From: Octopus sinensis | Taxonomy: Eukaryota | NCBI RefSeq assembly: GCF_006345805.1 | Contig: NC_043004.1 | Coordinates: 79,174,001 to 79,238,000 of the forward strand | Reading direction: 5' to 3' | DNA: 64,000 nucleotides | Shown here: positions 4,863-62,626 of the stretch, piece by piece | Numbering within the stretch: the stretch's first letter is position 1 | Layout: every line of letters starts with the position of its first letter | Translations under genes and position numbers: made by a program | The notes under the pieces: model-generated | Seen by the model: only the letters and a program-made list of their open reading frames with translations | The model's database searches: none | Told to the model about the DNA's origin: nothing

Positions 4863-4916
4863 GGGCCTAAAGGAATGTCAGGCGATCCAGGACGAATTGG
4901 TGATCCAGGAAGAGAG
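4863..4916 (+). CDS. Collagen triple-helix exon, 54 bp (GPKGMSGDPGRIGDPGRE)
   Basis: tttctgttccAG acceptor, six perfect Gly-X-Y triplets, GTAATT donor, phase 0. Confidence 0.93.
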
Positions 4917-5069
4917 GTAATTATACAATATTGTATATTATTTTGCACCAACTTTCTTTCATCAGAGTCTTTGCATATCTTTCCATTAAAGCTCTGGCAA
5001 TGATATTATTTTTATTGTGTAGCCCCAAAAGAGACTTATGATCGGATACACGTCATTATGTAACCCTTA

Positions 5070-5460
5070 AATTTAAGCCCTTCGCTCCGTACGGATCAGA
5101 GGCCATCGACAACTTTTCTTCATTCTTCTCGAATTTGGGTTGTCTTTTCTGCTTCCCTCCAGTTAGATCCCAGCTTTTTCAGCTCTAACTTCGTATCCCA
5201 CTTCATATGATTCCCTGAGGGAAGGCCTTCCTCATCCAGATCTTATTGGTTTTCAATCGTCATCCATGCTTCTGCAGCTTTGCTATTTCCAAGGTAAGGG
5301 TGTTGGCCCTATGCAAACTCACTTTGACCTCCAAGAAGAGGTGGTCTAGATTAGTCTGGCCACTGACCTTTGACCCAGAAGCTTGGGTTCTGCTGATATA
5401 TAACTTGAGTCATTGAAACCCGCAAGCCACCACACTGCAACAAGAACTGGACCTTGTGGT
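5070..5460 (-). mobile_element. RTE-clade LINE 3' fragment
   Basis: Minus strand reads ELKKLGSNWREAEKTTQIREE*RKVVDGL*, similar to the RTE ORF2 C-terminus (W...E..AQDR..WR..V.GLC). Confidence 0.6.
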
Positions 5461-6232
5461 GGGTCATTGTGTAACACCCAAGCAGATATATGATTAAATA
5501 TGTGTTCCAGTAGTGGCCAACTCATCTTATTTTCAGACGTAGTATATCTAGCACTTCAAAACTGAGAGTATCCTATGCTTAATAATATGGTAGTTTATGA
5601 TTTAAAGAATATTTGGCTGCGATTTCTTGGAGGTAAGGTGGCTAGGAATAAGTACACACGTTGATTTGTGAGAACTGCTTTAATTTCTTACGGTGAATAC
5701 AAAGAAGTTGGCAATAAAAACCCTGTGCAGCCCGAAAAGTAACTTTAGTTTTATATTTGGACGACATATTTAGTCATATCTAATTTGTAATATAATTCTA
5801 TAACATGGAACGCGATGTGGTTTATTATTTTTTTTAATTATTTTAAATCTAGGAACAAAATATGTTAGAGGGCTTTTGCATCGCTACAAATCATAAATGT
5901 ATGTGAGATGTACTAAATAGTTGCAGTGTAGCACCTTAGCAAAGGCGTTGAAAAAAAAAAAGAGAGAAGTGAAGTAAACGAAAATCAGTTCTGCGTCCTA
6001 CACTGCGACATAAACTCTGTACACCAGTTTATCGCGCTTTCGGTAAGAGCAGTGAAGTATATTATAATCAAAATGTCATTGGATTATATGAAAGGAGTTA
6101 ATAATAGGAGATCGTATCAGCAAACCTGGAAATTTCTTGATCATTACTCCTATTTTATTCAATGATAAATTTTGTTTCGTGAGTAAAATACAATTTGAAT
6201 GTGTGTGTGGTGTGAGTGTGTGTGTAGGGTTT

Positions 6233-6268
<36 letters not shown>

Positions 6269-6365
6269 GCGTGTGCGTGTGTGTGTGTGTGTACATATAT
6301 ATACACAGATAGGTAGATAGATAGGTAGATAAATAGCTAGATAGACAGATAGATACCTATACATG

Positions 6366-6411
<46 letters not shown>

Positions 6412-6638
6412 TGTGTGTGGAACAGAATATCCTGTCTAACTCCTAATGACCGAGGCAGTATCTATTGCTGAGGAGCAGAAGTTACGCCAAAACACCATGC
6501 TGACGTCACTTGGTAGGTCCTTACACAATGGGGATAAATTTGTTCCTCCAGAAAAATTCCGCAGAAATTGCCATTCCCAATGCAGTGTAGGAACGGAATA
6601 AGAATTAATTTACACATCATCCATTTATCTATCTATGT

Positions 6639-7020
6639 GGAGGCGCAATGGCCCAGTGGTTAGGGCAGCGGACTCGCGGTCATAGGATCGCGGTTTCGAT
6701 TCCCAGACCGGGCGTTGTGAGTGTTTATTGAGCGAAAACACCTATAAGCTCCACGAGGCTCCGGCAGGGGATGGTGGTGATCCCTGCTGTACTCTTTCAC
6801 CACAACTTTCTCTCACTCTTACTTTCTGTTTCTGTTGTACCTGTATTTCAAAGAACCGGCCTTGTCACTCTCTGTGTCACGCTGAATATCCCCGGGAACT
6901 ACGTTAAGGGTACACGTGTCTGTGGAGTGCTCAGCCACTTACACGTTAATTTCACGAGCAGGCTGTTCCGTTGATTCGGATCAACCGGAACCCTCGTCGT
7001 CGTAACCGACGGAATGCTTC
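6639..7020 (+). mobile_element. SINE family C, full length, tRNA-derived head
   Basis: A box TGGCCCAGTGG and B box GGTTTCGATTCC. Body and tail are shared with 58673-58977. Confidence 0.85.
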
Positions 7021-7491
7021 CATTATCTATCTATATAACTATTTATTTATCTATCTAGCTAGCTAGTTATCTATTTCTCTATTTCTTTAACTATCTATTT
7101 ATCTATCTATTTAGCTATGTATCAATCTATATATCAATCTATTTATCTATCTATCTCTCTCTCTCTGTCTCTCTCTCTCTCTCTCTCTCCCTATCTGTCT
7201 GTCTTTATCTATCTATCTATTTATCAGTCCATCTATCTATCTATCTGTCTGTCTGTTTCTCTGTCTGTCTCTATCTGTCTATCAAACTACCTATCTATCT
7301 GTGTGTGTGTCTCTATCTATCTTCCTCTCTCTCTCTCTCTCTCTCTCTATCTCTATCTATCTATCTGTCTGTCTGTCTGTATGTCTGTCTATCTATCTAT
7401 CTGTCTATCTTTCTTTCTATCTATCTATCTATCTGTCTATTTGTCTGTCTTTATGTATGTATGTATGTATGTATGTATGTATCTATCTATC

Positions 7492-7551
<60 letters not shown>

Positions 7552-7650
7552 AGTCCATCTGTCTGTTTGTCTATCTATCTGTCTGATGTCTGTCTGTCAG
7601 TCAGTCAGTCTGTCTGTCCATCTATCTTTCGCTCTATCTATCTACCTATA
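7021..7650. repeat. Compound (ATCT)n/(CT)n/(GTCT)n/(ATGT)n microsatellite
   Basis: Direct reading. It explains the YLSI-type ORFs here. Confidence 0.95.
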
Positions 7651-7731
7651 GTTATCGTATATACAAAAATTGCCTTTCATAATTCGTAACCATTAAATCT
7701 AACACTTGCAAATTGATCATCTTTTATAAAG

Positions 7732-7776
7732 GGAGTTATGGGACCAACCGGTCAGCCAGGAAATGACGGCAAAGAC
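7732..7776 (+). CDS. Collagen exon, 45 bp (GVMGPTGQPGNDGKD)
   Basis: cttttataaAG acceptor, five Gly-X-Y triplets, GTATGT donor. Confidence 0.92.
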
Positions 7777-7914
7777 GTATGTATCATTTATAATCTCTCC
7801 ATTTGCTATGTAATTATTACGAAAAACTGTAGCCTTCCTTGCAAAGATCTCGAGTTTTACTAGAGAAAGTTGATTGCTTCGATAAAACACGTACATTTAT
7901 CGTTGCATATATGT

Positions 7915-8010
7915 GTCATATAATATATATATATTATATATATATATAATATATATATATATATTATATATATATATATATATAAAATCATACATACATA
8001 CATTCATATA

Positions 8011-8057
<47 letters not shown>

Positions 8058-8105
8058 CGCGTGTGTGTGTGTGTGTATAAAATCATACATACATACATTC
8101 ATATA

Positions 8106-8162
<57 letters not shown>

Positions 8163-8191
8163 CATATATATATATACATATATATATATAC

Positions 8192-8275
<84 letters not shown>
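7915..8275. repeat. (TA)n microsatellite with a local duplication of aaaatcatacatacatacattcatatagtgtgc
   Basis: The unit is seen at about 7984 and 8079. Confidence 0.9.
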
Positions 8276-8279
<4 letters not shown>

Positions 8280-8816
8280 TTAAACGCACCAAAACTACGC
8301 TGATCTCCAGGGCTGATGAGCGATTTGAGAAGTGTCCCATGTGTATTGCCTTTTTCCATGTTTCACTTTAATGCTCACTGTGTGGGGGGCAAGGGACCTG
8401 CGTGTGTATGTTACCGAAAGGGAGACAGGACTGTGATATACATATATATACCACTTGTATCGTTGTGTATATTTTGCATACGCGCACATCTGTATGAATA
8501 TAATTTTACATTTGCGTGCAAGCGTGCGCGTGCACATAGGAAGGAGCACGGTGTGTGCTCACGTGTGTATGCATACAATTGTATTTATGTTTATGGTTGT
8601 ATTCAGATCTCTATCATTGTTAATTATCCGTGTGCCAGTGCACACAGACTATAATCAGCTGCTTATACAGGGTGCGGCAAATAGTCTCAGATTCATCATT
8701 CTGCATAAAGGTTTTAAAAGCAAAGACACAGCAAAGACAAAGCAAAGAACGATAAAACAATTGGCTATATGAAAACACATTCTAAGGCAGTTCCTATCAA
8801 TATAAGGAAGACAAAG

Positions 8817-9012
8817 TCGGCGAGCTGACAGAGTGGTTAGCACACCGGGTAAAATTCTTAGCCGTATTTCACCTGTCCTTACATCTTGAGTTCAAATTCC
8901 GCCGAGGTCGACTTTGCCGTTCATCCTTTAGGGGTCGATAAAATTAAGTACCAGTAAAACACTGACACCAGTATTTGACTGGCAACTGCTGGCTTTGTGC
9001 CAAAATTTGAAA
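8817..9012 (+). mobile_element. SINE family A
   Basis: ggcgagctgacagagtggttagcac..gagttcaaattccgccgaggtcgactttgcc. Confidence 0.85.
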
Positions 9013-9519
9013 CCTATATGAAGACGCATTTATCCCTTGCCCAGCTTCATTAGTTCCACACCAATGGTCGTGTTAAATGTAAGAGGATTGTTTTTCTATC
9101 ATTCACTGCAATTGATTTGTACTGTATCTGAAAGCAAGCGAGGTGACACCTGCCCCATTCAGGAAAGGTTACCTACTTTCGGCTAAATAAAATAAATCAT
9201 TGAACTCCGGACATGCTAGTCCTTTTCTAAAATTGCATTGAGGAAAGCATTTTATGTCATGTGGAATCTTGCTCCATGTTCTCATGAGCCATTTTGGTGT
9301 CCCCTAAAATATTTCTAGCTTTCGTCAATTGTCGGCAAAATACATTGGTTGCTACGATGAAAACAATCGGCCCCGGCATTTTTACTGAAATTCATTTGAA
9401 ATATACATACAAAAATACACTGCTTCTATCTCGAGCGGAGATTTTCTAACGGACTAGTTTCCTATTTTCTATATATTGCAAGCTAGGCTAGACTACTGCA
9501 ATACCTGGAAAACGAGTGC

Positions 9520-9565
9520 CCACCGCTGAAGAGATCCAATAAGATCGAAATCATGTTTCTGGTGG
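9520..9565 (+). ncRNA. Degenerate hammerhead-like motif
   Basis: CCACCG-CTGAAGA-GATC-caataa-GATC-GAAA-tcatgtttc-TGGTGG. Core, stem I and stem II fit; stem III is imperfect. Confidence 0.45.
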
Positions 9566-9868
9566 TCTCGGAGCTAGGGTGGCAAGGGTTCTCTCCCGCT
9601 TGCAATAGATATCGAGTGCGAAAGCGCACTGAATAAACCACTTGGAGGAGATGTCTCCCTGCGGTTAAAACAACAATATCGTCATCTCTTTGACAACACC
9701 AACGTTGAAGTGGTGATAAATTCTATACATATGTATATATATATATATATATATATAGTATTTTATGATGTGATTCATACATACATTCATAAAAATCATA
9801 ATAAATGAAGAAATTTATTTAAACACATTTCAATACTACCATTCTTAATAATTTTTATTATATTTTAG

Positions 9869-9922
9869 GGTTCTAAAGGAGATTCTGGTATTCCTGGAAT
9901 CAGAGGACCACAAGGACAAATT
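9869..9922 (+). CDS. Collagen exon, 54 bp (GSKGDSGIPGIRGPQGQI)
   Basis: tattttAG acceptor, six Gly-X-Y triplets, GTAAGT donor. Confidence 0.94.
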
Positions 9923-10172
9923 GTAAGTTTTTCAGCATCCGTTGAATATGAGGGTATGTGTGAGAGTGACCTGATGTCAGTAATTTATGTTTTTGTAAAA
10001 CAACAAACGAGTATCTTGTACACCTCCTTACCTTTTTACCTGCAACTCATCGAAGGCTAAACGTCCTCGTCACCGCCAGCAGACAGAAAATCATAGGTTC
10101 CATATGTTGTACGAAATCTGAAACAATCCAAAATGAAGGGCATTGGATTGGTAGAATTATTAGAATTTCGGA

Positions 10173-10223
<51 letters not shown>

Positions 10224-10240
10224 CATTATTATTATTATTA

Positions 10241-10436
10241 AGGCTGCGAACCGGGCAAAATGCTTAGCGGTATTTCATCCGTCGCTATGTTCTGAGTACA
10301 AATTCTGCCGAGGTCGACTTTGCTTTTCACCCTTCCGGGTAGAAAAAATAAGTACCAGTTGCATACTGAGGTCGATGTACTTGACTGAGGTCGATGTACC
10401 TCCCACCAAATTTCGGGCTTTGTGCCTTTAGCAGAA

Positions 10437-10473
<37 letters not shown>

Positions 10474-10705
10474 TATTATTATTATTAAAAGGCAGCAAGC
10501 TGGCAGAATCGTTAGTACGTCGGACGAAATGCCTAGCGGCTTTTGTCTGTCATTACGTTCTGAGTTCAAATTCCGCCGAGGTTGAACTTGCGTTTTATCC
10601 TTTCGGGATCGATAGAATTAAGTACCAGTGAAACACTGGAGTCGATGTAATCGACTAGTCCGCCCCACACTAAATTTCGGGCATTGTGCCTATAGTAGAA
10701 ATGAT
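10241..10705 (+). mobile_element. Two tandem SINE family A copies separated by (ATT)n
   Basis: Family A body at 10241-10435 and 10487-10705. Confidence 0.85.
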
Positions 10706-11339
10706 TACTACTACTACTACTACTACTACTTCTGCTGCTGCTGCTACTACTACTACTGATTAGCGAACGGTTTCATACGAAAGTTAGAGAGGTAGATGTA
10801 GATATCATTGAACATGACTGAATGGAAAAGTATGGCTTCTGCCCTTTCCTGCTAAAAAGCCTGAAAAACTCCACAGCCATTCTATGCATTACAGAATTGT
10901 AAAAATCCGGGCGAAAATAATACAAGTATAAGGTATAGACTAACAAAGCAAAAGAACAAAATGAACAAGGCTGGCTGTTAAGGTGATTGGAGTTATGTCT
11001 CTTGGATCGGTTTCTTTTAGCCATTGACGTGCATTTGGATAGCAAAAAGTATCCCCGCCCTCAGTAACACAGGTCGTACTTTTCTATTCGCATATGTCTG
11101 ATGATTGCTAAATATACTCGTCATTTTTGGCATGAAACCGTTCAGTAACAGCATTAACTGTCTATCATAAGATTATATTATATAAATAATGATAAAATAC
11201 ACACTCTATTGCCAGATATATGAGTGCTTTTTTTTATGATGTGAATACATACATATAGAAATGTATACATACACACACACACAAACATAAATATGCATAT
11301 GCATACGTATACATATATGTATTTATATATGTTCATATG

Positions 11340-11660
11340 TGTGGTGTATGTGGTAAGAGCGTCGGGCTCACAGACATGAGGTAATGGGTTCGATTCTAGA
11401 ACCGAGCTGTCTGTTGGGTTCTTGAACAAGACACTTTATTTCACGTTGCTCCAGTTCACTAACCCGTAAAAATGAGTTGCGACATCACTGGTGCCAAGCT
11501 GAATCGGTTTCTGCCTTTCTCTCGGTGGCATGGAGAGGGGAGGCCGGTATGCATGAGCGACTGTGCTGGTCTCCATAGAACTACCTAGCCCGGGTTTGTG
11601 TCTGGGAGGGTAACTTTCGAGGTGCAATGCCATGGTCAGTCATGACCGAAGAGGGGTGAT
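11340..11660 (+). mobile_element. SINE family D (tRNA head, CORE-like cttgaacaagacactt..ttgctccag centre)
   Basis: B-box-like GGGTTCGATTCT. Central block shared with 40072, 53870 and 27815. Confidence 0.65.
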
Positions 11661-11661
11661 C

Positions 11662-11701
<40 letters not shown>

Positions 11702-11942
11702 AGATGAGTGGTACAAAAAGTCACCAATATTTACTGGAAAATAGCATTCGATACAAATACGACGCTGTTGTAAAGTTTCACTGCGTATATACTGGCAAAG
11801 ACGTGTGTGTGCAACAAACATGAAAAATTTGTCTTACCTCTAGGAAGAACATTCGATAAATGGACAACTTAGAATCGGATAATGCAGGACTGGTTTCTGA
11901 CTCTTCAAATACGTTTGACAACGTAAATATAACGTAATCTAA

Positions 11943-11985
<43 letters not shown>

Positions 11986-12092
11986 ATATATATATAATAT
12001 GAATTAGAGATAAAACCACTATTATGCAACTCAAACAGTGATAGACATAAACCAATACATAAATAACAAATAATATAAATATAATTGATATA

Positions 12093-12133
<41 letters not shown>

Positions 12134-12613
12134 TTTTTCAAAAAGTATAAAAAGAATGGTAATACTTTTTGAAAAACAAAAAAAAGTTATATATATATAT
12201 AATATATTATATTAATTATATTTATATATTATTTGTTATTTATGTATTGGTTGCATAATAGTGGTTTTATCTCTAATTCATATTTTATATATTTATACTG
12301 TGAAATTTGATTTAATACTAAATCGAATTTTTCCCTGTAAGTTTGGAGCTATACTCCCTAATATTATATATATAATATATAACATATTATATATTACATA
12401 TTACATATTATATATTATATATATATATATAGGTAGATTACGTTATATTATAATTCATATTATACGTGTATGAATATGTGTGTGTGTGTGTGTGCGTGTG
12501 TGTGTGTGTATGTGTGTGTATGGAGAGAGAGAGACAGTGGGGAGAGATGAACTTGCTAACGTCGCTTTTATGCTAATAAAATGATGCTAAAACGGAAATT
12601 TTTACTTTTCCAG

Positions 12614-12667
12614 GGACAGCAAGGACCAGCAGGCCCTATTGGATTATCTGGACTTGATGGGAGAAAG
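12614..12667 (+). CDS. Collagen exon, 54 bp (GQQGPAGPIGLSGLDGRK)
   Basis: tttacttttccAG acceptor, six Gly-X-Y triplets, AAG/GTAACA donor. Confidence 0.94.
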
Positions 12668-21888: not shown

Positions 21889-21937
21889 TCGTTTTTCGTT
21901 GCTCATCGATTTTGAATCGATGAGCAACGAAAAACGA
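21889..21937. repeat. Perfect 23-bp inverted repeat with 3-nt loop
   Basis: TCGTTTTTCGTTGCTCATCGATT-ttg-AATCGATGAGCAACGAAAAACGA. Confidence 0.95.
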
Positions 21938-22979: not shown

Positions 22980-23250
22980 CCACAGACATGTTGTCTATCT
23001 CACTTTACTTTGTCTATTCCTGATACAATGATCTTTGTTCCTCACATCTGCATAATAATCAACCACCTCTACTCATACACCACCGATCTACTCACATCTC
23101 TTCCATCCGTCTCCAATATCAAACCCCACCACCACTACCTCAACCCGGGCGCCGCAATAACCAATATACACAGTTCTTTCTTCCTAGAACGTCATTCTGC
23201 TGGAATTCCCTTTCTGTCCAAGATTTCTCTCCTTTAACCAACAACTTGTA
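22980..23250 (+). mobile_element. CR1/L2-type LINE 3' fragment
   Basis: Reads FFLPRTSFCWNSL, similar to the FFPRT..WNSLP motif near the ORF2 C-terminus. Confidence 0.4.
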
Positions 23251-23875: not shown

Positions 23876-23906
<31 letters not shown>

Positions 23907-23989
23907 AATTGATGGTTTTAGCAGAAAGAGTCACCCAATAATTTTTGTGGGGGACAGGAAAGGGCCGAGGTCCATGATCGCCGACACCT

Positions 23990-24540
23990 GTGAGGAGGAG
24001 AAGGGGAGGAGGGGAGGGAGCGGAAGAGAGGAAACAGAAGAATGAAGAGGAAGAGGAGAGGGAGGAGAGGAAAAAGAATGAGGAGGAGGAAGAGAGGAAA
24101 CAGAAAAAGAATGAAAAGGAGGAGGAGGAGAGGAAGAAGAAGAAGAAGAAGAAGAAGGAGAAGGAGGAGGAAGAAGAAGAAGAGGGGGAGGAGGAGGAGA
24201 GGAAGCAGAAGGAGGGGAGGAAAAAGAAAGAGGAGGAGGAAGAGAGGAAGCAGAAGAAGGCGGAGGAGGGGAGGAGAGGAGGAAAAAGAAAGAGGAGGAG
24301 GAAGAGAGGAAGCAGAAGGAGGGGAGGAAAAAGAAAGAGGAGGAGAAGAGAGGAAGCAGAAGGAGGGGAGGAAAAAGAAAGAGGAGGAGGAAGAGAGGAA
24401 ACAGAAGAATGAAGAGGAAGAGGAGAGGGAGGAGAGGAAAAATAAAGAGGAGGAGGAAGAGAGGAAGGAGGAGGAAAGGAGGAGAAGAGGAGAAATGGGT
24501 AGTAGCAGTAGAAGTAGTAGTAGTAGTAGTAGTAGCGATG
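23990..24540. repeat. Purine-only (GAG/AAG)-rich low-complexity tandem region ending in (AGT)n
   Basis: Direct reading. It produces the E/K/R-rich pseudo-ORFs. Confidence 0.9.
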
Positions 24541-24739
24541 GTCTGAATGGTTAGCTCAACACTGCATAGATAAGTTTTCTTGACGCAGAGATCACAGTAA
24601 TAATTCAGAAAAGCAAAAGAACCGAATCGAAATATTCCATAAAAATCAATTCTATAAATATCAAAGAATAATCAGACACGCGACGACCATCGAAATCGAA
24701 ACCGATCGAAATGTAGTGCAAATATAAATAGTGGTTTCT

Positions 24740-24951
24740 GATTTTGGCACAAAGCCAGTAATTTTGCGGAGGAGCGGGGTAAGTCGGTTACATCCACCCC
24801 AGAGCTTACCTGGTACTTATTTTATCAACCCCGAAAGGGACGAAAGGCAAAGACAACCTCGGTGACATTTGAACTCGGAACGTAGAGCCGGACGAAATGC
24901 TGCTAAGCAATTTTGTCCGATGTACTAACGACTCGACCAGCTCGCCGTCTT
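24740..24951 (-). mobile_element. SINE family A
   Basis: Reverse complement of the family A body. Confidence 0.8.
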
Positions 24952-25060
24952 AAGTGTAGATATAAATAGTGGTTTCTAACTTTGACACAAGGCCAGCAAT
25001 TTCTGTTTGTATGTATATGTGTGTGTATTTATATCTATAACTTAACCTTATGTACTTTCT

Positions 25061-25190
25061 AAAATCTCTGACGAAGCCTAGAGAAACATCCAAATACCTC
25101 AATTTCATCTACTAATTACTTCAGTCTACTGGAGGGATAAAGGTAGAATGAGGTATTTTTACCTCTTGGCTGAAACAGCTGTAAGATATT
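25061..25190 (+). ncRNA. Type I hammerhead ribozyme with canonical core and expanded stem II (solo PLE terminal repeat or retrozyme-like)
   Basis: ATCT-CTGACGA(25068-25074)-AGCC...GGCT-GAAA(25172-25175)-CAGCTG-TA-AGAT. Inner pairing AAATACCTCA/TGAGGTATTT. Predicted cleavage after A25183. Confidence 0.8.
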
Positions 25191-25619
25191 ATCCCAATTT
25201 CTATTCCTGTATGTTATATATTTTAATAATTATTGATATCTTTATATATTTTATATGTAAAGCATACGTTATATATGTATGTATATTCTTGTAATTGTCA
25301 ATTTAGTAAATAAATATATAAATAAAATGAAGTAATATAATGTCTAAAAGTTGATCCCCTCCATTTTCTTATTGCTCTATAAATTAAAGGCAAATTAACT
25401 CTTTACCCTCACCCATTTATTACACTCGGTAATGTAATTTCAATGCAATAAAAAAACACTTGTGTATTAATAATTGGGTAGTCTACCAGTAGTACATTGG
25501 ATTGATATTATCCCTTAGTTGGTTGGATTCACAACTTCTAACTTTCTTGGAATATACATACACACAAACATATATATATATTTATTTAAAAATGTAGAGG
25601 TAACGCACAAGTAGATATT

Positions 25620-26577
25620 TATGAAAAAAAGGACGAAAATGCTACTTTTTAAAAATTAGGTACATTTAAATTTCTTTATATAAATACATTAAAAAAAGGT
25701 TTTTGTTATGCATGTTTCGGTTGTTTATAAACCTTATCAAAAATATTTACTTAAATGAAATATGTAGTGAAAAAAAATTATTAATAAAACAAACGTTCAA
25801 GTACACTTTCTGTATTTAAGAGATAATGGTTAGGGCAGCGGACTCGCAGTCGGAGGATCGCAGTTTCGATTCCCAGACCGGGCGTTGTGTGTGTTTATTG
25901 AGTGAAAACACCTAAAGCTCCACGAGGCCCCGACAGGGGGTGGTGGCGACCCCTGTTGTACTCTTTCGCCCCAACTTTCTCTCATTCTTTCTTCCTATTT
26001 CTTGTCCCCGACTGCCTACGCAACCGCTGAGCCCGGATGCGCATTCATCCATTCGTCGATGCTCTCGGTGTCGGGGGGTTGACCTGCTTTCTCTTCTGCG
26101 GGTCTTACGAATAGCAAAGGACCACATTTCGGACTTCTCTCATCTTGCAAGCTCTGGGACGAAGACCGTTCGCTCAACAGCAACAGCAACTGCAGCGTCA
26201 GCAATAATACTCGTCGTAAACTTATCTCCCCTGAGGTCTTCACAGAAATGGATTTATTCAACCTCTGATCTTTATTTCTTATAAATCATATACATATAGT
26301 TTCAGTGTTTCGAGCTTAAAGAATTTAGATTCGATACTTTATGAAATGCATTTCCTCGCTAATGCGTTCCCTTGCAGGAAAAAGAAAAGTACACTATGAA
26401 CATTTATTTTATTAATAACTTTATTAATTATTTTTCTCTACATATTTCATTTAAGTGAATATGTTTGATAAGGTTTATAAATAACCGAAACATGTAAAAC
26501 AAAAAAGTTTTTTAAATGTTTTTATATAGAGAAATTTAAATGAACCTAATTTTTAAAAAGTAGCATTTTCGCCCTTC

Positions 26578-26583
<6 letters not shown>
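25620..26583. mobile_element. Long-TIR non-autonomous DNA element (Tc1/mariner-like, TA flanks) interrupted by a SINE
   Basis: About 185-bp imperfect inverted arms at 25620-25800 and 26397-26583 (gaaaatgctactttttaaaaattagg / cctaatttttaaaaagtagcattttc). Confidence 0.75.
25827..26190 (+). mobile_element. SINE family C head with alternative 3' tail (C')
   Basis: Head as in the 6639 copy; tail tgtccccgactgcctacgcaacc..gggacgaagaccgttcgctcaacagcaac is shared with 56213. Confidence 0.85.
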
Positions 26584-26623
<40 letters not shown>

Positions 26624-26625
26624 AA

Positions 26626-27008
26626 GGAGTGGCTGTGTAGTAAGTAGCTTGGGGTTCAGTCCCACTGCGTGGCATCTTGGGCAAGTGTCTTCTAGCTATA
26701 GCCTCGGGTCGACAAAAGCCTTGTGAGTGGATTTGGTTGACGGAAACTGAAAGAACGCCGTCATATATATATATATATATATATCCTTGTGTGTGGGTGT
26801 TTGTGTGTCTGTCTCACCCTCCCACCCACCAACATCGCTTGACAAACGACGCTGGTGTATTTACGTCCCCGTAACCTAGCGGTTCGGCAAAAAGATAACC
26901 GATAGAATAAGTACTAGGCTTACAAAGTTCTGGGGTCGATTTGCTCTACTAAAAAGCGGTGCTCCAGCATGGCTGCAGTCAAATGACTGAAACAAATAAA
27001 AGGATAAA
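26626..27008 (+). mobile_element. SINE family B
   Basis: ggagtggctgtgtagtaag head through gactgaaacaaataaaagga tail. Confidence 0.85.
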
Positions 27009-27057
27009 AGAATGTGTGTGTGTGCGCGCGTTGGTGTGTGTGTGTGTGCGCGCGTTG

Positions 27058-27101
<44 letters not shown>

Positions 27102-28071
27102 TACAGACAAACAGACAGACAGTAAGTAATTATACACACACACAAAGCTAGATCGTGATTTAATTACTTGCATTTGGTGATTGTATGTAGGGGGGGCTGT
27201 GTGTACATATGTGTGTGTGTGCATGTATGTGTGTGCGTGTGTGTGTGTGTGCATGTGTGTGCATGTGTGTGCGTGTGTGGGGGATGTGGCTGTGTGTGCA
27301 TATGTGTGTGGGGGGTGCTTTTTGTATTGATAATGAGATAGATAAATTAGATAGAGGGGATTTAATGGCGGGTAGCGTTGGATTAAGAGGGGAAAACACC
27401 TGGTAACGACCCTCTCTTGATGATGTGTCAAGGGTCAAGGGAAGCTACCCATAGGACAACTATGAAAAGATTTCGACTTCCATTCTCATCGATGCGATGA
27501 GATATAAGACTAATCAGATCATTGATTGATTATTTCTCTCACCTTCCCTCTCCACTCCTATCAATATACTCCGAGTTGTCTGAATAACATTAAAAGGTAG
27601 GAGCTCTTTAGTGGCATAACTACACTTTGGTGCCCCACCTCGACTTGCTTTCTAATACATGCATTTTCATAAATGAAATTTTAAAGAGATACGTAAGTGA
27701 AGATTACGAATATATTGATAGGCTTTATGCTTTTTGTTTCTGTCTTTAACAAGTTTTTGATCATTCGCAACTTCCTGCTCTCGATTTTGTTTCCTCGTTG
27801 CATTCACGATCGCTAGATCGTGGGTTCGATTCCCGAACCTGGCTATGCGTTATGTTATTAAGCAAACCACTTCATTTTACAATCTTCCGGTCCACTCGGC
27901 TATGACTGAGTAACCCTGCGACCACTGGGCGCCCATTCTGAGGGAGGGCGTTGTGATCTCGTCTCGGTCAAGACACCATGGACACCGAGTGACCGGTCTT
28001 ATGTATCGAACAACTCGAGACAGAACTTATTATAATTCTCTTTAAAATTTATATTTTTAAAGAACATTTTG

Positions 28072-28225
28072 CTGTGTGGTAAGAAGCTTGCTTCTGAACC
28101 AATGGTTCCAGGTTCAGTCCCGCTGCATGGCACTTTGGGCAAGTGTCTTCTACTATAGCTTCTGGCTGACCAAAGCCTTGTGAGTGAATTTGGTAGGCGG
28201 AAACCGAAAGAAGCCCGTCGTATAC

Positions 28226-28263
<38 letters not shown>

Positions 28264-28919
28264 ATCTATGTGTATGTGTCTTTTTGTCTGTATTTGCCCA
28301 CCCCCCGTCACCGCTTGATAACTGGTGGTGTTGTGTTTACGTCTTCGTAATTAAGCGGTTCAGCAAAAGAGACCGATAGAATAAGCACTACGCTTAAAAT
28401 GATAAGTCCTGAGATCGATTTCTTTCTACCAAAACCCTTCAAGGCCTGAAACAAGTAAAAGAGTGAATGGCATTTCGGTAGGTTTCGAGAATCTAGATTA
28501 CATTAACATTCATAAAACTTACAAAACAAATTTTTTCGAATGGATTACGGATCGTCCTGCCTGCCTTCCTTCCTTCCTTCCTTCCTGCCTTCCTTCCTTC
28601 CTTCCTTCCTTCCTTCCTTCCTTCTACCATCGTCGCCTGACGCTCATCCTTCCTTTCTTTTCTTAGTATTTTGCATCCCTTTTTTGTTTTTCTTATATGC
28701 ATGTGTTTGAAAGACCAACCTCGAAAATGTATTTCTGCAAAATATAGCTAACGTATAGGCGCATGCGTAGCTGTATGGTAAGAAATTTGTTTCCCAACCA
28801 CATAGTTCCAGGTTCGGTCCCACTGCTTGGCACCTTGGGCAAGTGTCTTCTACTATAGCCTCGTGCCGACCAAAGCCCTGTGAGTGGATTAAGTAAATGG
28901 AAACTGAAAGAAACCTGTC

Positions 28920-28965
<46 letters not shown>

Positions 28966-29080
28966 ACGTGATCACCGTGACCGACCAGGCTATCAGATGT
29001 TGCAACACATCGCTGGTCACAATGCGCTTCGCATTGCTTTAGCCTTCAAATGACGCCACGCCGCTGGTTAAGCGAGCAGG

Positions 29081-29133
<53 letters not shown>

Positions 29134-29941
29134 GTGTGTGTATGTATGTATGTATGTATGTATGTATGTATGTATGTATGTACTTGTGTGTCTGAGTCTG
29201 TATCACCACCATCACTTGTCAACCGATGTTGGTGTGTTTACTACGTTCCCCGTAACTTAGCAGTTCGGCAAAAGAGTCCGATAGAATAAGTACTAGCTAG
29301 AAAAAAGAATAAGTCCTGGGGTCAATTTGCTCGACAAAAGGCGATGCTCCAGCATGGCCGCATTCAAATGACTGAAACAAGTAAAAGAATACAAGAATGT
29401 GTGTGTGTGTGTGTGTGTGTGTGTCTTTGTGCCGGTGTCCTCCACCAAAGCGTGACAAACGGTGTTGGCGTGTTTACGTCCCCGTAAATTAGCAGCTCGG
29501 GAAAGCGGCCGATAGAATTGACTCCAAGTTTTTTTAAAAATAATTAGGTACTGGATAGTTAGGTCATTCGACTAAACAAAAAAATTCAAGGCGGTACCCC
29601 AGCATGGCCGCAGTCTAATTGACTGAAACAAGTGAAAGAGATGAAAGATGTACCTATGGATGTATGGATAGGTGGATGTAGGCGTGACTGTGTGGTTAGA
29701 AATTTGCTTCCCAACCACATGGTTCTGGGTTCAGTCCCACTGTGTGGCACCTTAGGCAAGTGTCTTCTATTATAGCCCTGGGACGACCAATCACAAGTGA
29801 ATTTGATAGACAAAAACGTTGCGAGGAAAGCTGTCATCTTTACCTGTGTATCTATCTATACTTTCATCAATCCATCCCTCTGTCTGCCTGTCTGTGTGTG
29901 TGTGTGTGTGTCTGTTTATCAATCTTTCTATCTATCTATCC

Positions 29942-29986
<45 letters not shown>

Positions 29987-30283
29987 CCTATCTATATATC
30001 TATCTATCTATCTATCAGTCTGTCTGTCTGTCTGTCTATTTATCTGTGTGTGTGTGTATGCTTATGCGTACGTGTCCTTGTCCCTATGCTTAACCCTCCA
30101 CACACGCCAATGCTTGACAATCGGTGCTGGCTTGTTTACGTTCTCATAACATTAGCGGTTCGACAAAACAGACCGACAGAATAAGTATGTAACTTTTGAA
30201 AGAAAACATCGGCCGGTTTGTCTGAAGCCCTTCAAAGCAGTGCCCAAGCATAGCCGCAGTCTAATGACTGAAACAAGTAAAAA
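28072..30283 (+). mobile_element. Cluster of three to four tandem family B SINEs, each with an internal microsatellite
   Basis: Heads at about 28072, 28763 and 29680; repeated ccagcatggccgcagtc..gactgaaacaag tails. Confidence 0.85.
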
Positions 30284-30529
30284 AATAATGATATAATCGT
30301 AATGCACAACTTCGAAAACGCAACCCTGTAAAATTTCCAGAAAATAGGCATCATATCAGAAAATTATGCAGAAACAAGAACGGTGGGGCCCTAATGTGTA
30401 CATATACGCCTCCGGCTTCGTATTGAGTAACGAAAAGAGATTGTCGTCTTTACCACGTTTCTTTCACATTGCAACAAGTTTCATGGTGATTACATTCTGA
30501 TTTATACTCCTAGGTGAACAAATGGACGT

Positions 30530-32304
30530 CACGAAGGGGAGACGAACTTAATCGAGTCCCCCTTCATTTGTCGTCTGCTGTGTTATCCCCACGGCTAAGC
30601 CCTAGCTCGCTCTCTAAAGAATGCGTGTGTTTGTGTGTTCGTTCCGGCGCATTCTACTCACACGCGCATGAACATACGCACGCACGCACGCACAACGAAG
30701 TGATGGGTTTCGTGTGAACGCATGCTTAGCATGAACCAGGAAAGGCGAGGAATTCTTTTGGGTGGGGAGAAGAAAATTAAGAATTTCGGTAAAGTTTACA
30801 GATAACAGCGGTCGTTGTTCCTGCCAAGCATTAAAATCATAAAGAAACTTTGCTTTATTTTATTTCATTTTTACTTATTATCAATGTGATTCTTTTTCTT
30901 GTTAAGGCAGCGAGCCGGCAGAATCGTTTGCACGCCGGGCCAAATGCTTAGCGGCATTTCGTCCGTATTTACATTCTGAGTTCAAATTCCGCTGAGGTCG
31001 ATTTTATCCTTTTGACGTCGATAAAATGAGTACCAGTCGAGCACTGGGGTCGATGTAATCTTATCCCCTCCCCTCCCTTGATTTTGCTGGTCTTGTGCCT
31101 ATAGTAGGAAGGATTATTTTTATTATTAATATGACAACTTTGCGAGAAAAAAAAAACATCATCATTCAGCGAAACGAAACAATGCGCTATTATTGTTTTA
31201 TATTTTTTAAACAACTTAAGAAGCAACCACTTCGCTATCTCAGCAACAAACATTTCAGTTTGACCAAAAATACAGTTGTTATTATATATTAAGAAAGAGA
31301 GGGGGAGTGAAACAGAGAGAGGGGGTGAAACAGAGAGAAGGGGGTGAAACAGAGAGAGAGGGAGAGGTTCACACAATGAATATAAAATGAATAAAGGCGG
31401 AGAGAAACAGGTTTAGGGGTTGTTTTTTTTTCGTTTGTTTCTACAGATTTTTTTTTTTGCAAGTTAAATTGAAAATCAAAATTATAAGCAAAAACAGAAA
31501 GAAAAATTTACATTCAAATACTCACTCTTTTCCTTGAATCTTTTAATTATATTTTTTTCCATTTTCATATAAAAAAAATATTTTGTCTTTCTGTAAACTT
31601 CAGTACTAATTCTTTTACACCAATTTCTCGTCTTATTCTGTAACTCGTTCCCTCCCACAATTCCACCCCACTCCTCTTTCACTCTCTTTATCTCTCTCTC
31701 TCTTTCTCTCTCATTAACCTCACATCCCCGCTCTCTTTCTTCTCTCTGTCTCTCATCATCTTTACATCTCCGTTCTTTTTCTTTTTTCTTTCTTTCTTTC
31801 TTTCTTTCTTTCATTATCCTTACATCTCCCTTCCCCCATCTTTCCCCTCTCATTATCGTTACAACTCCTCCTCCTCCTCCTCCTCCTCCTCATTTCTCTT
31901 CTTCTTCCTCTCTTTTGCTCTCTCGTTCTTTCACTGCCAGATTACCAAAACAAACCCCTCACCCTCCCAACACCCGTCCTTCCCCCTCCCTCCCTCCCTC
32001 CCTCCCTCCACACTTCCACTGTCTTCTCCCTCCCCCACATTCTTTCTCTAACTCTTCGTAGTAGTAAAAAAAATAAAAAAAAAGAAAGAAAGAAAGAAAA
32101 GAAAAGAAATCAAAAAGAAAGCCATTTCTAGGAGGACTTATGCGAGCGAGCGTTTTCTGGCGACCAGCTCCGTTGGTGTATGCCACCCTGCAACCAACTA
32201 AACAGCAGACGTGCTGCTAACAACAACGTCGAGGAAAAGTTGAATTACCAAATTATATTTCTCGACATAAGTCAAAATTGTACAGTTTAGGACACACCAA
32301 CATT
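30530..32304 (+). promoter_or_regulatory. Candidate promoter/5' UTR for the downstream collagen transcript
   Basis: CpG-richer unique blocks (30530-30760 and 32120-32240) and a long TC-rich tract (about 31660-32050) upstream of ATG 32305. No clear TATA box. Confidence 0.3.
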
Positions 32305-32478
32305 ATGTCTGTGACTATACCAAATGGAGAATTAATTCGACTCGTTGTTTTATCTGTTTTAATTTTCTCACCTGCTGTAATTTTAAGTCAAGATTTCGAA
32401 CCTGTTTATCTGCAGGGTGATCCTGGTGAGCGCGGACCAAGTGGCCCCGTCGGACCACCTGGCAAAGATGGCAAGCCG
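32305..32478 (+). CDS. Collagen exon: signal-peptide-like leader (32305-32415) plus seven Gly-X-Y triplets (32416-32478)
   Basis: MSVTIPNGELIRLVVLSVLIFSPAVILSQDFEPVYLQ-GDPGERGPSGPVGPPGKDGKP, GTAAGT donor. The Gly-X-Y part is near certain; use of the leader is less so because ctgcAG at 32414-32415 is also a good acceptor. Confidence 0.8.
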
Positions 32479-32619
32479 GTAAGTTAACATTTTTATTTGA
32501 TTTTATTTCATCGAATAAATAAATAAATGTCTGTATATATATATATAAAAAAAAATTTTTTAAATACATATATATGAATGTGAATTACATCCATCCATCC
32601 GTCTATCTATCAATCTATC

Positions 32620-40905: not shown

Positions 40906-42505
40906 TTGAGTGCGAGTGAGATGCTTGTGTAACAAGATTGAGTGTGATCGAAGATGCTTGTGTAACAAGATTGAGTGTGAGCGAAGATGCTTGTGTAACA
41001 AGATTGAGTGTGAGCGAAGATGCTTGTGTAACAAGATTGAGTGTGAGCGAGGATGCTTGTGTAACAAGGTTGAGTGTGAGCGAAGATGCTTGTGTAACAA
41101 GATTGAGTGTGAGCGAAGATGCTTGTGTAACAAGATTGAGTGTGAGCGAGGATGCTTGTGTAACAAGGTGAGTGTGAGCGAAGATGCTTGTGTAACAAGA
41201 TTGAGTGTGAGCGAGGATGCTTGTGTAACAAGGTTGAGTGTGAGCGAAGATGCTTGTGTAACAAGATTGAGTGTGAGCGAAGATGCTTGTGTAACAAGAT
41301 TGAGTGTGAGCGAAGATGCTTGTGTAACAAGATTGAGTGTGATCGAAGATGCTTGTGTAACAAGATTGAGTGTGAGCGAGGATGCTTGTGTAACAAGGTT
41401 GAGTGTGAGCGAAGATGCTTGTGTAACAAGATTGAGTGTGAGCGAAGATGCTTGTGTACAAGATTGAGTGTGAGCGAGGATGCTTGTGTAACAAGGTTGA
41501 GTGTGAGCGAAGATGCTTGTGTAACAAGATTGAGTGTGAGCGAGGATGCTTGTGTAACAAGGTTGAGTGTGAGCGAAGATGCTTGTGTAACAAGATTGAG
41601 TGTGAGCGAAGATGCTTGTGTAACAAGATTGAGTGTGAGCGAAGATGCTTGTGTAACAAGATTGAGTGTGATCGAAGATGCTTGTGTAACAAGATTGAGT
41701 GTGAGCGAGGATGCTTGTGTAACAAGGTTGAGTGTGAGCGAAGATGCTTGTGTAACAAGATTGAGTGTGAGCGAAGATGCTTGTGTAACAAGATTGAGTG
41801 TGATCGAAGATGCTTGTGTAACAAGATTGAGTGTGAGCGAAGATGCTTGTGTAACAAGATTGAGTGTGAGCGAAGATGCTTGTGTAACAAGATTGAGTGT
41901 GAGCGAAGATGCTTGTGTAACAAGATTGAGTGTGAGCGAGGATGCTTGTGTAACAAGGTTGAGTGTGAGCGAAGATGCTTGTGTAACAAGATTGAGTGTG
42001 AGCGAGGATGCTTGTGTAACAAGGTTGAGTGTGAGCGAAGATGCTTGTGTAACAAGATTGAGTGTGAGCGAAGATGCTTGTGTAACAAGATTGAGTGTGA
42101 GCGAAGATGCTTGTGTAACAAGATTGAGTGTGATCGAAGATGCTTGTGTAACAAGATTGAGTGTGAGCGAAGATGCTTGTGTAACAAGATTGAGTGTGAT
42201 CGAAGATGCTTGTGTAACAAGATTGAGTGTGAGCGAAGATGCTTGTGTAACAAGATTGAGTGTGAGCGAAGATGCTTGTGTAACAAGATTGAGTGTGATC
42301 GAAGATGCTTGTGTAACAAGATTGAGTGTGAGCGAAGAATCTTGTGTAACAAGATTGAGTGTGAGCGAAGATGCTTATGTAACAAGATTGAGTGTGAGCG
42401 AAGATGCTTGTGTAACAAGATTGAGTGTGATCGAAGATGCTTGTGTAACAAGATTGAGTATGAGCGAAGATGCTTGTGTAACAAGACTGAGTTTCAGTGA
42501 ACGAA
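40906..42505. repeat. 33-bp minisatellite, about 48 units (GATTGAGTGTGAGCGAAGATGCTTGTGTAACAA)
   Basis: Direct reading; 11-aa periodicity in the ORF track. Confidence 0.97.
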
Positions 42506-56804: not shown

Positions 56805-56876
56805 GGCATAATTGGTCCACCAGGACAATCGGGTATAATGGGACCTGTTGGCCTACCAGGTGTCCCTGGACCACCT
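56805..56876 (+). CDS. Collagen exon, 72 bp (GIIGPPGQSGIMGPVGLPGVPGPP)
   Basis: Polypyrimidine tract plus tcAG acceptor, eight Gly-X-Y triplets, GTAAGT donor. Confidence 0.95.
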
Positions 56877-58465: not shown

Positions 58466-58501
58466 GGACCTCCCGGGCCGGTAGGACCACAAGGAGACCG
58501 T
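58466..58501 (+). CDS. Collagen exon, 36 bp (GPPGPVGPQGDR)
   Basis: tttccAG acceptor, four triplets, GTAAGT donor. Confidence 0.93.
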
Positions 58502-61454: not shown

Positions 61455-61487
61455 GGTCAGCCTGGACAAAATGGCCCCGCTGGAATG
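61455..61487 (+). CDS. Collagen exon, 33 bp (GQPGQNGPAGM)
   Basis: ttttAG acceptor, GTAAGT donor; the final triplet is completed by the next exon. Confidence 0.92.
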
Positions 61488-62479: not shown

Positions 62480-62626
62480 CCTGGTGAGAGAGGAGCTACT
62501 GGTGAGCCTGGGCCTACAGGACCCCAAGGACCCCCTGGTATACCAGGAATGCCAGGACCTGCAGGTGTTACTGGACCAAGAGGACTTCGGGGACAAACAG
62601 GAATGCCTGGCATGCCAGGACTACCG
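62480..62626 (+). CDS. Collagen exon, 147 bp (P followed by 16 Gly-X-Y: [49 protein letters not shown])
   Basis: tcctgttcaaAG acceptor, CCG/GTTTGT donor. The gene continues beyond the window. Confidence 0.95.

What the first reader, a model, noticed from the sequence alone, without database searches (positions are those of the whole stretch)
32305..32478. Dual-use collagen exon: signal peptide hidden behind an internal splice acceptor
Seen: the 63-bp Gly-X-Y exon has a good acceptor (ctgcAG, 32414-32415). The sequence upstream is nevertheless open in the same frame back to a TAA at 32218, and has an ATG (32305, A at -3) encoding MSVTIPNGELIRLVVLSVLIFSPAVILS/QDFEPVYLQ. The next intron is 24 kb, against about 0.7-3 kb for the others. 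Known: a signal peptide, N-terminal Gln, short peptide, about 20-triplet minor helix, interruption and then main helix is the layout of short-N-propeptide fibrillar procollagens such as COL1A2; alternative promoters make short isoforms of COL9A1 and COL18A1. Inference: either a second collagen gene starts here, or an internal promoter yields a secreted short chain while a long isoform splices in at 32416 and gains extra helix.
Basis: partly seen in the sequence, partly recalled or inferred. Interest (0 to 1): 0.8.

Follow-up and report, generated by a model that had tools for sequence, protein, structure and literature searches.

The report
Likely first exon of a collagen gene
A 63-base collagen exon is preceded, in the same reading frame, by a start codon and a textbook secretion signal that chance rarely produces, so a collagen chain probably starts here; no RNA or cross-species data could be obtained to prove it, and if true it is an ordinary gene-annotation detail.

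Summary
ATG 32305 has A at -3. The frame is open from TAA 32218 through the 63-bp Gly-X-Y exon 32416-32478, which has a gtaagt donor, and CAG|G sits exactly at the start of the helix.

Both halves are unlikely by chance:
- An in-frame ATG with an open frame and a rule-passing signal peptide upstream of an AG occurs at 0.1-0.5% of control sites or shuffles.
- An acceptor-like context in front of a random GG occurs at 0.4-0.9%.

The best reading is an exon of internal-exon ancestry whose former intron end now supplies the 5'UTR, start codon, signal peptide and a 9-residue N-peptide. That makes it the first coding exon of a collagen transcription unit (about 0.6). Supporting points:
- a TATA-like and an Inr-like motif at canonical spacing;
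- the longest intron in the window directly downstream;
- a switch in exon-size class and in helix composition at this point;
- the weakest branch-point and AG-free zone of all the acceptors.

Present-day dual use (a hybrid first/internal exon) cannot be tested here (about 0.2). A chance ORF remains possible (about 0.3).

The COL1A2-like layout is not supported, because the helix runs for at least 39 uninterrupted triplets. No ortholog, transcript or annotation was found in any searchable collection. Interest is modest.

The parts
32254..32260 (+). TATA-like element (TATATTT), 30 nt upstream of the Inr-like A
   Evidence: A TATAWW motif with CAGT 28-33 nt downstream occurs only 17 times in 128 kb (both strands). 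The motif was looked for after seeing the sequence (post hoc). Function is inferred.
32282..32288 (+). Initiator-like motif ACAGTTT. The predicted transcription start is A 32284, giving a 21-nt 5'UTR (32284-32304) with no upstream ATG.
   Evidence: Inferred from the motif only; there is no CAGE or RACE.
32305..32388 (+). Start codon (A at -3) and predicted 28-residue signal peptide. n-region M1-R12; h-region L13-F21 (32341-32367); c-region SPAVILS, with cleavage after S28 or alternatively after A24.
   Evidence: Passes a strict rule-based test that 0.1-0.5% of controls pass. SignalP was not available.
32389..32415 (+). 9-residue non-helical N-peptide QDFEPVYLQ. Its last codon, CAG, supplies the embedded acceptor AG (32414-32415).
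32394..32415 (+). Embedded 3' splice-site motif, either a relic or still in use: 13 of 19 pyrimidines at -22..-4, C at -3, AG|G. The nearest upstream AG leaves only 23 nt free, and there is no yTnAy motif between -23 and -12.
32416..32478 (+). First seven Gly-X-Y triplets (GDPGERGPSGPVGPPGKDGKP), followed by donor gtaagt at 32479-32484.
   Evidence: Pfam Collagen PF01391, E 4.7e-21 for the joined product.
56805..56876 (+). Next collagen exon, 72 bp (8 triplets), after a 24,326-nt intron.
58466..58501 (+). Collagen exon, 36 bp (4 triplets).
61455..61487 (+). Collagen exon, 33 bp, ending inside a triplet (…G-M | ), with donor ATG|gtaagt.
62480..62626 (+). Collagen exon, 147 bp, starting with the Y-position Pro that completes G-M-P. 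The helix is continuous for 39 triplets.
4863..12667 (+). Upstream group of four collagen exons with 54/45/54/54-bp sizes: 4863-4916, 7732-7776, 9869-9922 and 12614-12667. They belong either to an upstream collagen gene or to the 5' part of a long isoform.
   Evidence: Pro at X/Y positions is 9/46 here against 32/78 downstream (Fisher p=0.018).
31603..32060 (+). About 450-nt polypyrimidine tract (85% C+T), followed by a polypurine run at 32060-32130, lying 175-700 nt upstream of the ATG.
   Evidence: It is one of only two such strand-asymmetric tracts in 64 kb. Any promoter role is speculative.

Best explanation
Bases 32305-32478 are most likely a genuine first coding exon of a collagen alpha-chain transcription unit.

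Proposed mechanism:
1. Transcription starts about 20 nt upstream, at an Inr-like A (32284) 30 nt below a TATA-like box.
2. Translation starts at ATG 32305.
3. The first 28 residues (or 24) act as a cleavable signal peptide that sends the chain into the ER.
4. The mature chain begins with Gln and a 9-residue non-helical peptide, then runs straight into a Gly-X-Y helix.
5. After a 24-kb first intron, the helix continues through the exons at 56805, 58466, 61455 and 62480, giving at least 39 uninterrupted triplets.

The exon has the anatomy of an ordinary internal collagen exon: an acceptor-like CAG|G sits exactly at the first Gly codon. The simplest history is that an internal exon acquired a promoter, and the end of its upstream intron was taken over as 5'UTR, start codon and signal peptide.

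Shown: the sequence features and their rarity under null models.
Inferred: transcription start, translation, secretion, and the evolutionary route.
Not known: whether the acceptor is still used.
For: 1. The leader is rare by chance: 0.3-0.5% of AG sites and 0.1-0.35% of local dinucleotide shuffles. The eight other exons have 0-18 open codons upstream, against 65 here. The rule is stringent: only 24 of 85 collagen N-termini pass it, and it has 1.1% false positives on internal Met-started 45-mers.
2. The start context has A at -3 and there is a single in-frame ATG.
3. TATA-like 32254 and Inr-like CAGT 32284 lie at 30-nt spacing. Such pairs occur 17 times in 128 kb, so about 1% chance within the 90 nt upstream of a given ATG. 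This test was chosen post hoc.
4. The intron after the exon is the longest in the window (24.3 kb). Longer first introns are a general property of eukaryotic genes (PMC2518113).
5. Exon sizes switch here from 54/45/54/54 to 63/72/36/33/147 bp. Pro at X/Y positions rises from 20% to 41% (p=0.018).
6. Of all the acceptors, the one at 32416 has the shortest AG-free zone (23 nt against 26-114). It has no branch-point-like motif between -23 and -12.
7. The 32130-32520 stretch is single-copy in the window, so it is not a repeat.
Against: - There is no transcript, CAGE, annotation or ortholog evidence.
  - Nothing in the protein collections carries the leader. These searches were size-limited or swamped by generic collagen hits, and no cephalopod protein surfaced at all.
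  - The genomic ORF is not on record.
  - The metagenome scan was empty.
- The finding was picked out after the fact from nine exons, which raises the chance probability to about 1-5%.
- The acceptor-like context at exactly the first Gly codon would be a 0.4-0.9% coincidence for an exon that had never been internal.
- No terminal exon or C-terminal domain for an upstream gene was found between 12668 and 32304. The upstream exons may therefore need this exon to continue.
- The leader is AT-rich (33% GC), like the introns.
- The n-region is long (12 residues) with net charge 0.
Confidence: 0.6

Rival explanations
1. Purely internal exon. All nine Gly-X-Y exons belong to one long collagen gene with two large introns (19.7 and 24.3 kb). 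Exon 12614-12667 splices to 32416. The ATG and hydrophobic 'leader' are a chance translation of the intron end and are never translated.
For: - The site has a consensus-like acceptor (13/19 pyrimidines, CAG|G).
- The join GRK|GDP keeps frame and Gly-X-Y register.
- No 3' end or C-terminal domain for a separate upstream gene lies in 12668-32304.
- The leader has intron-like composition, and frame 3 of the same 111 nt also appears open (read by eye, not computed).
- Selecting one of nine exons after the fact puts the chance at about 1-5%.
- No database protein carries the leader.
Against: - The leader passes a strict signal-peptide rule at p of about 0.001-0.005 per site.
- A TATA/Inr pair lies at the right distance.
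- This acceptor has the weakest branch-point and AG-free zone.
- Exon class and composition switch at exactly this exon.
- The other exons have at most 18 open codons upstream.
Confidence: 0.3
2. Hybrid first/internal exon in present-day use. An internal promoter gives a secreted short chain starting at ATG 32305. Transcripts from the upstream promoter splice from 12667 to 32416 and carry extra helix. This is a special case of the best explanation, not exclusive of it.
For: It explains both improbable features together: the leader (0.1-0.5%) and the acceptor context exactly at the first Gly (0.4-0.9%). The upstream exons have no visible alternative 3' end. Hybrid first-internal exons are common in human transcriptomes (PMC11797052, PMC8769537).
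Against: - Two AGs (G at -24 and G at -29) lie between the only canonical branch-point motifs (-46, -54) and the acceptor. Using the AG at -30/-29 would break the frame (and my reading of the sequence).
- Helix composition differs on the two sides.
- A relic acceptor left from internal-exon ancestry explains the motif equally well.
- No transcript data are available.
Confidence: 0.2
3. A second collagen gene does begin in the 19.7-kb gap, but its true first exon (with a different signal peptide) lies further upstream and splices into 32416. The ATG 32305 leader is then unused.
For: The acceptor motif is present, and exon class and composition switch here.
Against: No candidate upstream leader exon stands out in 12668-32304. 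This reading needs the 32305 leader to be a coincidence as well.
Confidence: 0.05

Closest known systems
Hybrid first-internal exons (Fiszbein lab: PMC8769537; PMC11797052)
   Same: One exon carries both a 3' splice site and, just upstream, promoter-like elements. The literature describes both evolutionary routes: an internal exon gaining promoter elements, and a first exon gaining a 3' splice site.
   Different: Those exons are defined from RNA-seq and CAGE usage in human. Here only sequence motifs are available and use in either mode is unproven. Here the extension would also add a signal peptide, so the two isoforms would differ in how, or whether, they are secreted.
COL9A1 short form from an alternative downstream promoter, and the COL9A2/COL9A3 chains (own knowledge: Nishimura, Muragaki & Olsen 1989, for COL9A1 only; not checked in the library)
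   Same: A collagen chain in which a signal peptide is followed after only a few residues by the triple helix. In COL9A1 an internal promoter produces a chain lacking the N-terminal globular domain.
   Different: In COL9A1 the alternative first exon is a separate exon inside an intron, not a 5' extension of an internal helix exon. FACIT hallmarks (Cys pairs at COL/NC junctions, NC interruptions) lie outside the window or were not seen. Orthology was not tested.
   Same: A signal peptide, an N-terminal Gln and a short non-helical peptide before Gly-X-Y.
   Different: No interruption occurs after a minor helix: there are 39 continuous triplets. Downstream exons are 63/72/36/33/147 bp with a split triplet, rather than 54/45/99/108. 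No C-propeptide is in the window.
COL18A1 two-promoter isoforms (own knowledge)
   Same: Alternative promoters give collagen chains with different N-termini and different signal peptides.
   Different: The COL18A1 variants use separate first exons and an internal donor in exon 3. They do not use an acceptor embedded in a first exon.

Membership tests
Collagen triple-helix repeat (Pfam PF01391) | Uninterrupted Gly-X-Y repeats recognised by the Collagen profile | tested here: met
   PF01391 with E 4.7e-21 for the joined downstream product and 3.9e-17 for the upstream exons; every third residue is Gly in both exon groups.
Eukaryotic secretory signal peptide | An n-region with a basic residue, an uncharged hydrophobic h-region of at least 8 residues, a c-region with small residues at -1 and -3, and a total length of 15-35 | tested here: met
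   The rule-based test is passed (h-region 13-20/21; cleavage after A24 or S28). Controls pass at 0.1-0.5%. SignalP itself was not available.
Eukaryotic secretory signal peptide | Actually translated, and cleaved or secreted | not testable with these tools
   No transcript, ribosome-profiling or proteomic data could be reached.
Fibrillar procollagen with short N-propeptide (COL1A2-like) | A minor helix followed by a non-helical N-telopeptide before the main helix | tested here: not met
   There are 39 continuous triplets from 32416 to 62626. The apparent break at 61488 is removed by the 61487|62480 splice (G-M|P).
Fibrillar procollagen with short N-propeptide (COL1A2-like) | Main-helix exons of 54 bp or its relatives (45, 99, 108, 162), each starting with a complete Gly codon | tested here: not met
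   The downstream exons are 63, 72, 36, 33 and 147 bp, and one triplet is split between exons. The upstream group (54/45/54/54) does fit this pattern.
Fibrillar procollagen with short N-propeptide (COL1A2-like) | C-propeptide (COLFI, PF01410) | not testable with these tools
   tblastn with 374 helix-masked collagens, including many with PF01410, found no non-collagenous collagen domain in the window. For the downstream chain, the window ends while still inside the helix.
Hybrid first-internal exon | A functional 3' splice site inside or at the 5' side of the exon | tested here: inconclusive
   The motif is present and rare by chance. However, it has the shortest AG-free zone and no well-placed branch-point motif.
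Hybrid first-internal exon | Transcription initiation at or near the exon | tested here: inconclusive
   Only a TATA-like and Inr-like motif pair at 32254/32284, identified post hoc.
Hybrid first-internal exon | Observed use as a first exon in some transcripts and as an internal exon in others | not testable with these tools
   No RNA data. The protein-collection searches gave nothing.
FACIT / type IX-like chain without an NC4 domain | Signal peptide followed within a few residues by the first COL domain | tested here: inconclusive
   The layout matches, but it is shared with many other collagen-like proteins.
FACIT / type IX-like chain without an NC4 domain | NC interruptions with conserved Cys at COL/NC junctions; orthology to COL9-type genes | not testable with these tools
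   The window ends after 39 triplets. Gly-X-Y sequence alone gave only generic 40-58% matches.

The most novel reading that the evidence does not exclude
The exon is a working hybrid. The end of an intron in front of a Gly-X-Y exon has been taken over to encode a signal peptide. An internal promoter then makes a secreted, N-terminally truncated collagen chain, while the long isoform splices past that peptide. This would be a snapshot of how a new collagen chain or gene can be born from the middle of an old one.
Probability: 0.2. Interest if true: 0.5.

Novelty: new member of a known kind. Interest (0 to 1): 0.27.

Why it matters
If the leader is real, it marks the 5' end of a collagen chain (or of a short isoform). 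An exon-chaining annotation could fuse that chain to the upstream collagen exons, which would change the predicted protein, its N-terminus and its gene count. If both uses are real, it would be a clean non-vertebrate example of a hybrid first/internal exon in which intron sequence became a signal peptide. That bears on how modular Gly-X-Y genes spawn new chains. Either way it is an annotation-level result, not a new kind of system.

Tried and rejected
1. Ortholog and transcript search, all without result.
- The search for homologous proteins was run three times:
  - leader plus helix, swamped by generic collagen hits;
  - a five-fold concatenation of upstream exons, leader and downstream exons, used to reach long proteins. 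No hit exceeded 48% identity and there was no cephalopod.
- That tool appears to list only targets up to about 1.75 times the query length (270 aa or less for a 154-aa query; 906-1938 aa for a 1115-aa query). The negatives therefore cover roughly up to 73, up to 270 and about 640-1950 aa only.
- phmmer against 1.84 billion representatives returned generic long collagens. The few hits whose alignment reached the leader (P0158, P0228, P0260) look like non-animal collagen-like proteins rather than orthologs, judging from their sequences.
- Local BLAST of all fetched proteins gave at most 58% identity and no leader match.

2. Exact look-ups of the 60-aa ATG ORF, the 69-aa TTG ORF and a retroelement ORF were not on record.

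3. The metagenome scan with the leader found no relatives.

4. CpG observed/expected as a promoter mark was uninformative, because CpG is not depleted anywhere in the window.

5. Search for a C-terminal end of an upstream gene.
- No COLFI, C4, VWA, TSPN or similar domain was found by tblastn.
- Stop-to-stop fragments look like repeats.
- 25 'terminal exon' candidates appear from motif rules alone, and none is convincing.

6. Segmental paralogy between the upstream and downstream halves: only interspersed repeats match.

7. Rfam and tRNA scans found nothing.

8. The literature gave no cephalopod collagen gene structures, and the COL9A1 promoter papers are not in the library.

Full report
**What is there**

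The window is AT-rich (about 33-42% GC) and full of microsatellites and SINE-like repeats. On the + strand it carries nine clean Gly-X-Y exons.
- An upstream group: 4863-4916 (54 bp), 7732-7776 (45), 9869-9922 (54) and 12614-12667 (54).
- A downstream group: 32416-32478 (63), 56805-56876 (72), 58466-58501 (36), 61455-61487 (33) and 62480-62626 (147).
- All have AG acceptors and GT donors and are in phase 0, except that the 33-bp exon ends after G-M and the 147-bp exon starts with the Pro that completes the triplet.
- Introns are 2815, 2092, 2691, 19748, 24326, 1589, 2953 and 992 nt.
- The joined products score as Pfam Collagen.

**The observation**

- TAA at 32218, then 65 open codons;
- a single in-frame ATG at 32305 with A at -3;
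- MSVTIPNGELIRLVVLSVLIFSPAVILSQDFEPVYLQ, then seven Gly-X-Y triplets and a gtaagt donor;
- the last leader codon is CAG, so an AG sits exactly before the first Gly codon.

**Is the leader more than chance?**

The other eight exons have only 0-18 open in-frame codons upstream. I wrote a rule-based test. It requires an in-frame ATG 18-65 codons upstream with no stop, an n-region with non-negative charge, and an uncharged h-region of at least 8 residues that is at least 75% hydrophobic. It also requires small residues at -1 and -3 within 2-8 residues, and a total length of 15-35.
- The leader passes, with h-region 13-20 and cleavage after A24. S28/Q29 also fits the -3/-1 rule.
- Among all AG dinucleotides of the window, 0.5-1.1% pass. 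With microsatellites masked, 0.3-0.5% pass.
- Among 20,000 dinucleotide-preserving shuffles of the local sequence, 0.1-0.35% pass.
- A looser hydrophobicity-only test gave 1-2%.
- The rule is stringent. Only 24 of 85 Met-started collagen N-termini of mixed quality pass it, and 1.1% of internal Met-started 45-mers do.
- With nine exons to choose from, the window-wide chance is roughly 1-5%.

**Is the acceptor more than chance?**

Among all GG positions in the window:
- 7.1% are preceded by AG;
- 0.9% have AG plus at least 13 of 19 pyrimidines at -22..-4;
- 0.37% also have a pyrimidine at -3.

A first exon that had never been internal would therefore show this configuration at exactly its first Gly codon less than 1% of the time. 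Since every other collagen exon here begins at a Gly codon after an AG, the exon very likely descends from an ordinary internal collagen exon.

The site is nevertheless the weakest acceptor of the set. Its AG-free zone is 23 nt, against 26-114 for the eight others. The only yTnAy motifs lie at -46 and -54, upstream of two intervening AGs, or at -8, which is too close. Reading the sequence, use of the intervening AG at -30/-29 would shift the frame.

**Context that favours a start here**

- TATATTT at 32254 and ACAGTTT, with its A at 32284, are 30 nt apart. That would give a 21-nt 5'UTR free of upstream ATGs. TATAWW with CAGT 28-33 nt downstream occurs 17 times in 128 kb, so about 1% chance in the 90 nt before a given ATG. 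I looked for this after seeing the sequence, so it counts for less.
- The intron that follows is the longest in the window, and first introns tend to be the longest (PMC2518113).
- Exon-size class changes here. The helix changes character too: Pro fills 9 of 46 X/Y positions upstream and 32 of 78 downstream (Fisher p=0.018), and charged residues are 15/46 against 13/78.
- 32130-32520 is single-copy within the window.
- A roughly 450-nt polypyrimidine tract (31603-32060), followed by a polypurine run, lies just upstream. It is one of only two such tracts in 64 kb. I attach no weight to it.

**Context that favours a purely internal exon**

- No C-terminal collagen domain (COLFI, C4, VWA, TSPN, olfactomedin, fibrinogen and others) is found anywhere in the window by tblastn with 374 helix-masked collagens.
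- The + strand fragments between 12668 and 32304 look like repeats.
- Motif rules give 25 unconvincing terminal-exon candidates.
- The candidate at 13385 is a decayed partial copy of the 3' part of exon 12614-12667 and its intron: 34 nt match at 88%, and it is 32 nt long up to its GT, so out of frame. Read through, it would give GHLGQDGTKKRYPFC*, with AATAAA about 50 nt downstream. An upstream gene could conceivably end there, but its acceptor is poor.
- The join GRK|GDP is seamless.

**External evidence**

None could be obtained. All three word-index protein searches, the exhaustive phmmer search, exact look-ups of the genomic ORFs and a metagenome scan found no protein or locus with the leader. 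They also found no near-identical copy of any of these exons.

The word-index tool appears to list only targets up to about 1.75 times the query length, and collagen queries are swamped by generic hits. No cephalopod sequence surfaced at all. These negatives say little beyond 'not annotated in what I could reach'.

**Weighing**

The leader (p of about 0.001-0.005, or 0.01-0.05 after correcting for choice) and the acceptor (p of about 0.004-0.009) are each unlikely accidents. The reading that needs no coincidence is an internal-type exon whose upstream intron end now encodes a start codon and signal peptide. Two things could have produced this: an internal promoter arising in one gene (a hybrid exon), or the 5' end of a separate, probably duplicated, collagen gene being rebuilt from an internal exon. 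The weak branch-point and AG-free zone and the composition switch lean towards the acceptor being a relic. The missing 3' end of the upstream exons leans the other way.

My estimates:
- a real first coding exon: about 0.6;
- of which present-day dual use: about 0.2;
- chance ORF in a purely internal exon: about 0.3;
- other arrangements: about 0.05-0.1.

**Comparison with what is known**

- Exons that serve as first exons in some transcripts and internal exons in others are documented as widespread in human. [quoted passage not shown]
- Collagen chains in which a signal peptide is followed almost at once by the helix are well known. So are internal promoters that make N-terminally shorter collagen chains (COL9A1, COL9A2/A3, COL18A1; from my own knowledge).
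There is no interruption in 39 triplets, and the exon sizes are non-fibrillar. The third feature, the C-propeptide, cannot be tested because the window ends inside the helix.

**Verdict**

The feature is real at the sequence level. It is probably the 5' end of a collagen chain and possibly a hybrid exon. It is a new member of a known kind and of modest interest until RNA or comparative data decide between the readings.

Noticed in passing
window 13385-13432 (with 13423-13456 and AATAAA at about 13482): A decayed partial copy of the 3' part of exon 12614-12667 plus its downstream intron (34 nt match at 88%). It is 32 nt long up to its GT, so out of frame as an internal exon. Read through, it gives GHLGQDGTKKRYPFC* with a poly(A) signal about 50 nt after the stop. 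It is either a pseudo-exon or a possible alternative terminal exon of the upstream collagen.
   Followed up: partly
window 61455-61487 and 62480-62626: A Gly-X-Y triplet is split between a 33-bp and a 147-bp exon (G-M | P). This is typical of non-fibrillar collagen genes and contrasts with the 54/45-bp exons at 4863-12667.
   Followed up: yes
window 31603-32130: A polypyrimidine tract of about 450 nt (85% C+T) followed by a polypurine run of about 70 nt, directly upstream of the candidate start. It is one of only two strongly strand-asymmetric tracts in the window; the other is the purine-rich 23868-24594.
   Followed up: partly
window 40906-42492: A 33-bp tandem repeat of 48 copies at 95% identity. 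It lies inside the 24-kb intron and is open in several frames on both strands (ORFs up to 528 aa).
   Followed up: partly
window 377-2353, minus strand: Two long ORFs (235 and 289 aa) with distant similarity to a segment of a 4756-aa database protein (tblastn, 21% over 720 aa, E 4e-21), but no Pfam hit. They are probably a retroelement fragment. The end of the 235-aa ORF resembles a GIY-YIG motif as found in Penelope-like elements (my recollection, not tested).
   Followed up: partly
window 13525-13700, 10489-10707, 6637-6892 and copies at 48.3-50.0 kb, 56.2 kb, 57.4 kb, 58.7 kb: Several families of interspersed SINE-like repeats of about 150-250 bp (73-91% identity) fill the introns on both strands.
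   Followed up: no
upstream exons 4863-12667 versus downstream exons 32416-62626: The helix changes character between the two groups. Pro at X/Y positions is 20% upstream against 41% downstream, there are 0 against 5 GPP triplets, and charged residues are 33% against 17%.
   Followed up: yes
tool behaviour: the search for homologous proteins appears to return only targets up to about 1.75 times the query length (270 aa or less for a 154-aa query; 1938 aa or less for a 1115-aa query). Short queries therefore cannot find long annotated proteins, and negative results have to be read with that limit in mind.
   Followed up: partly
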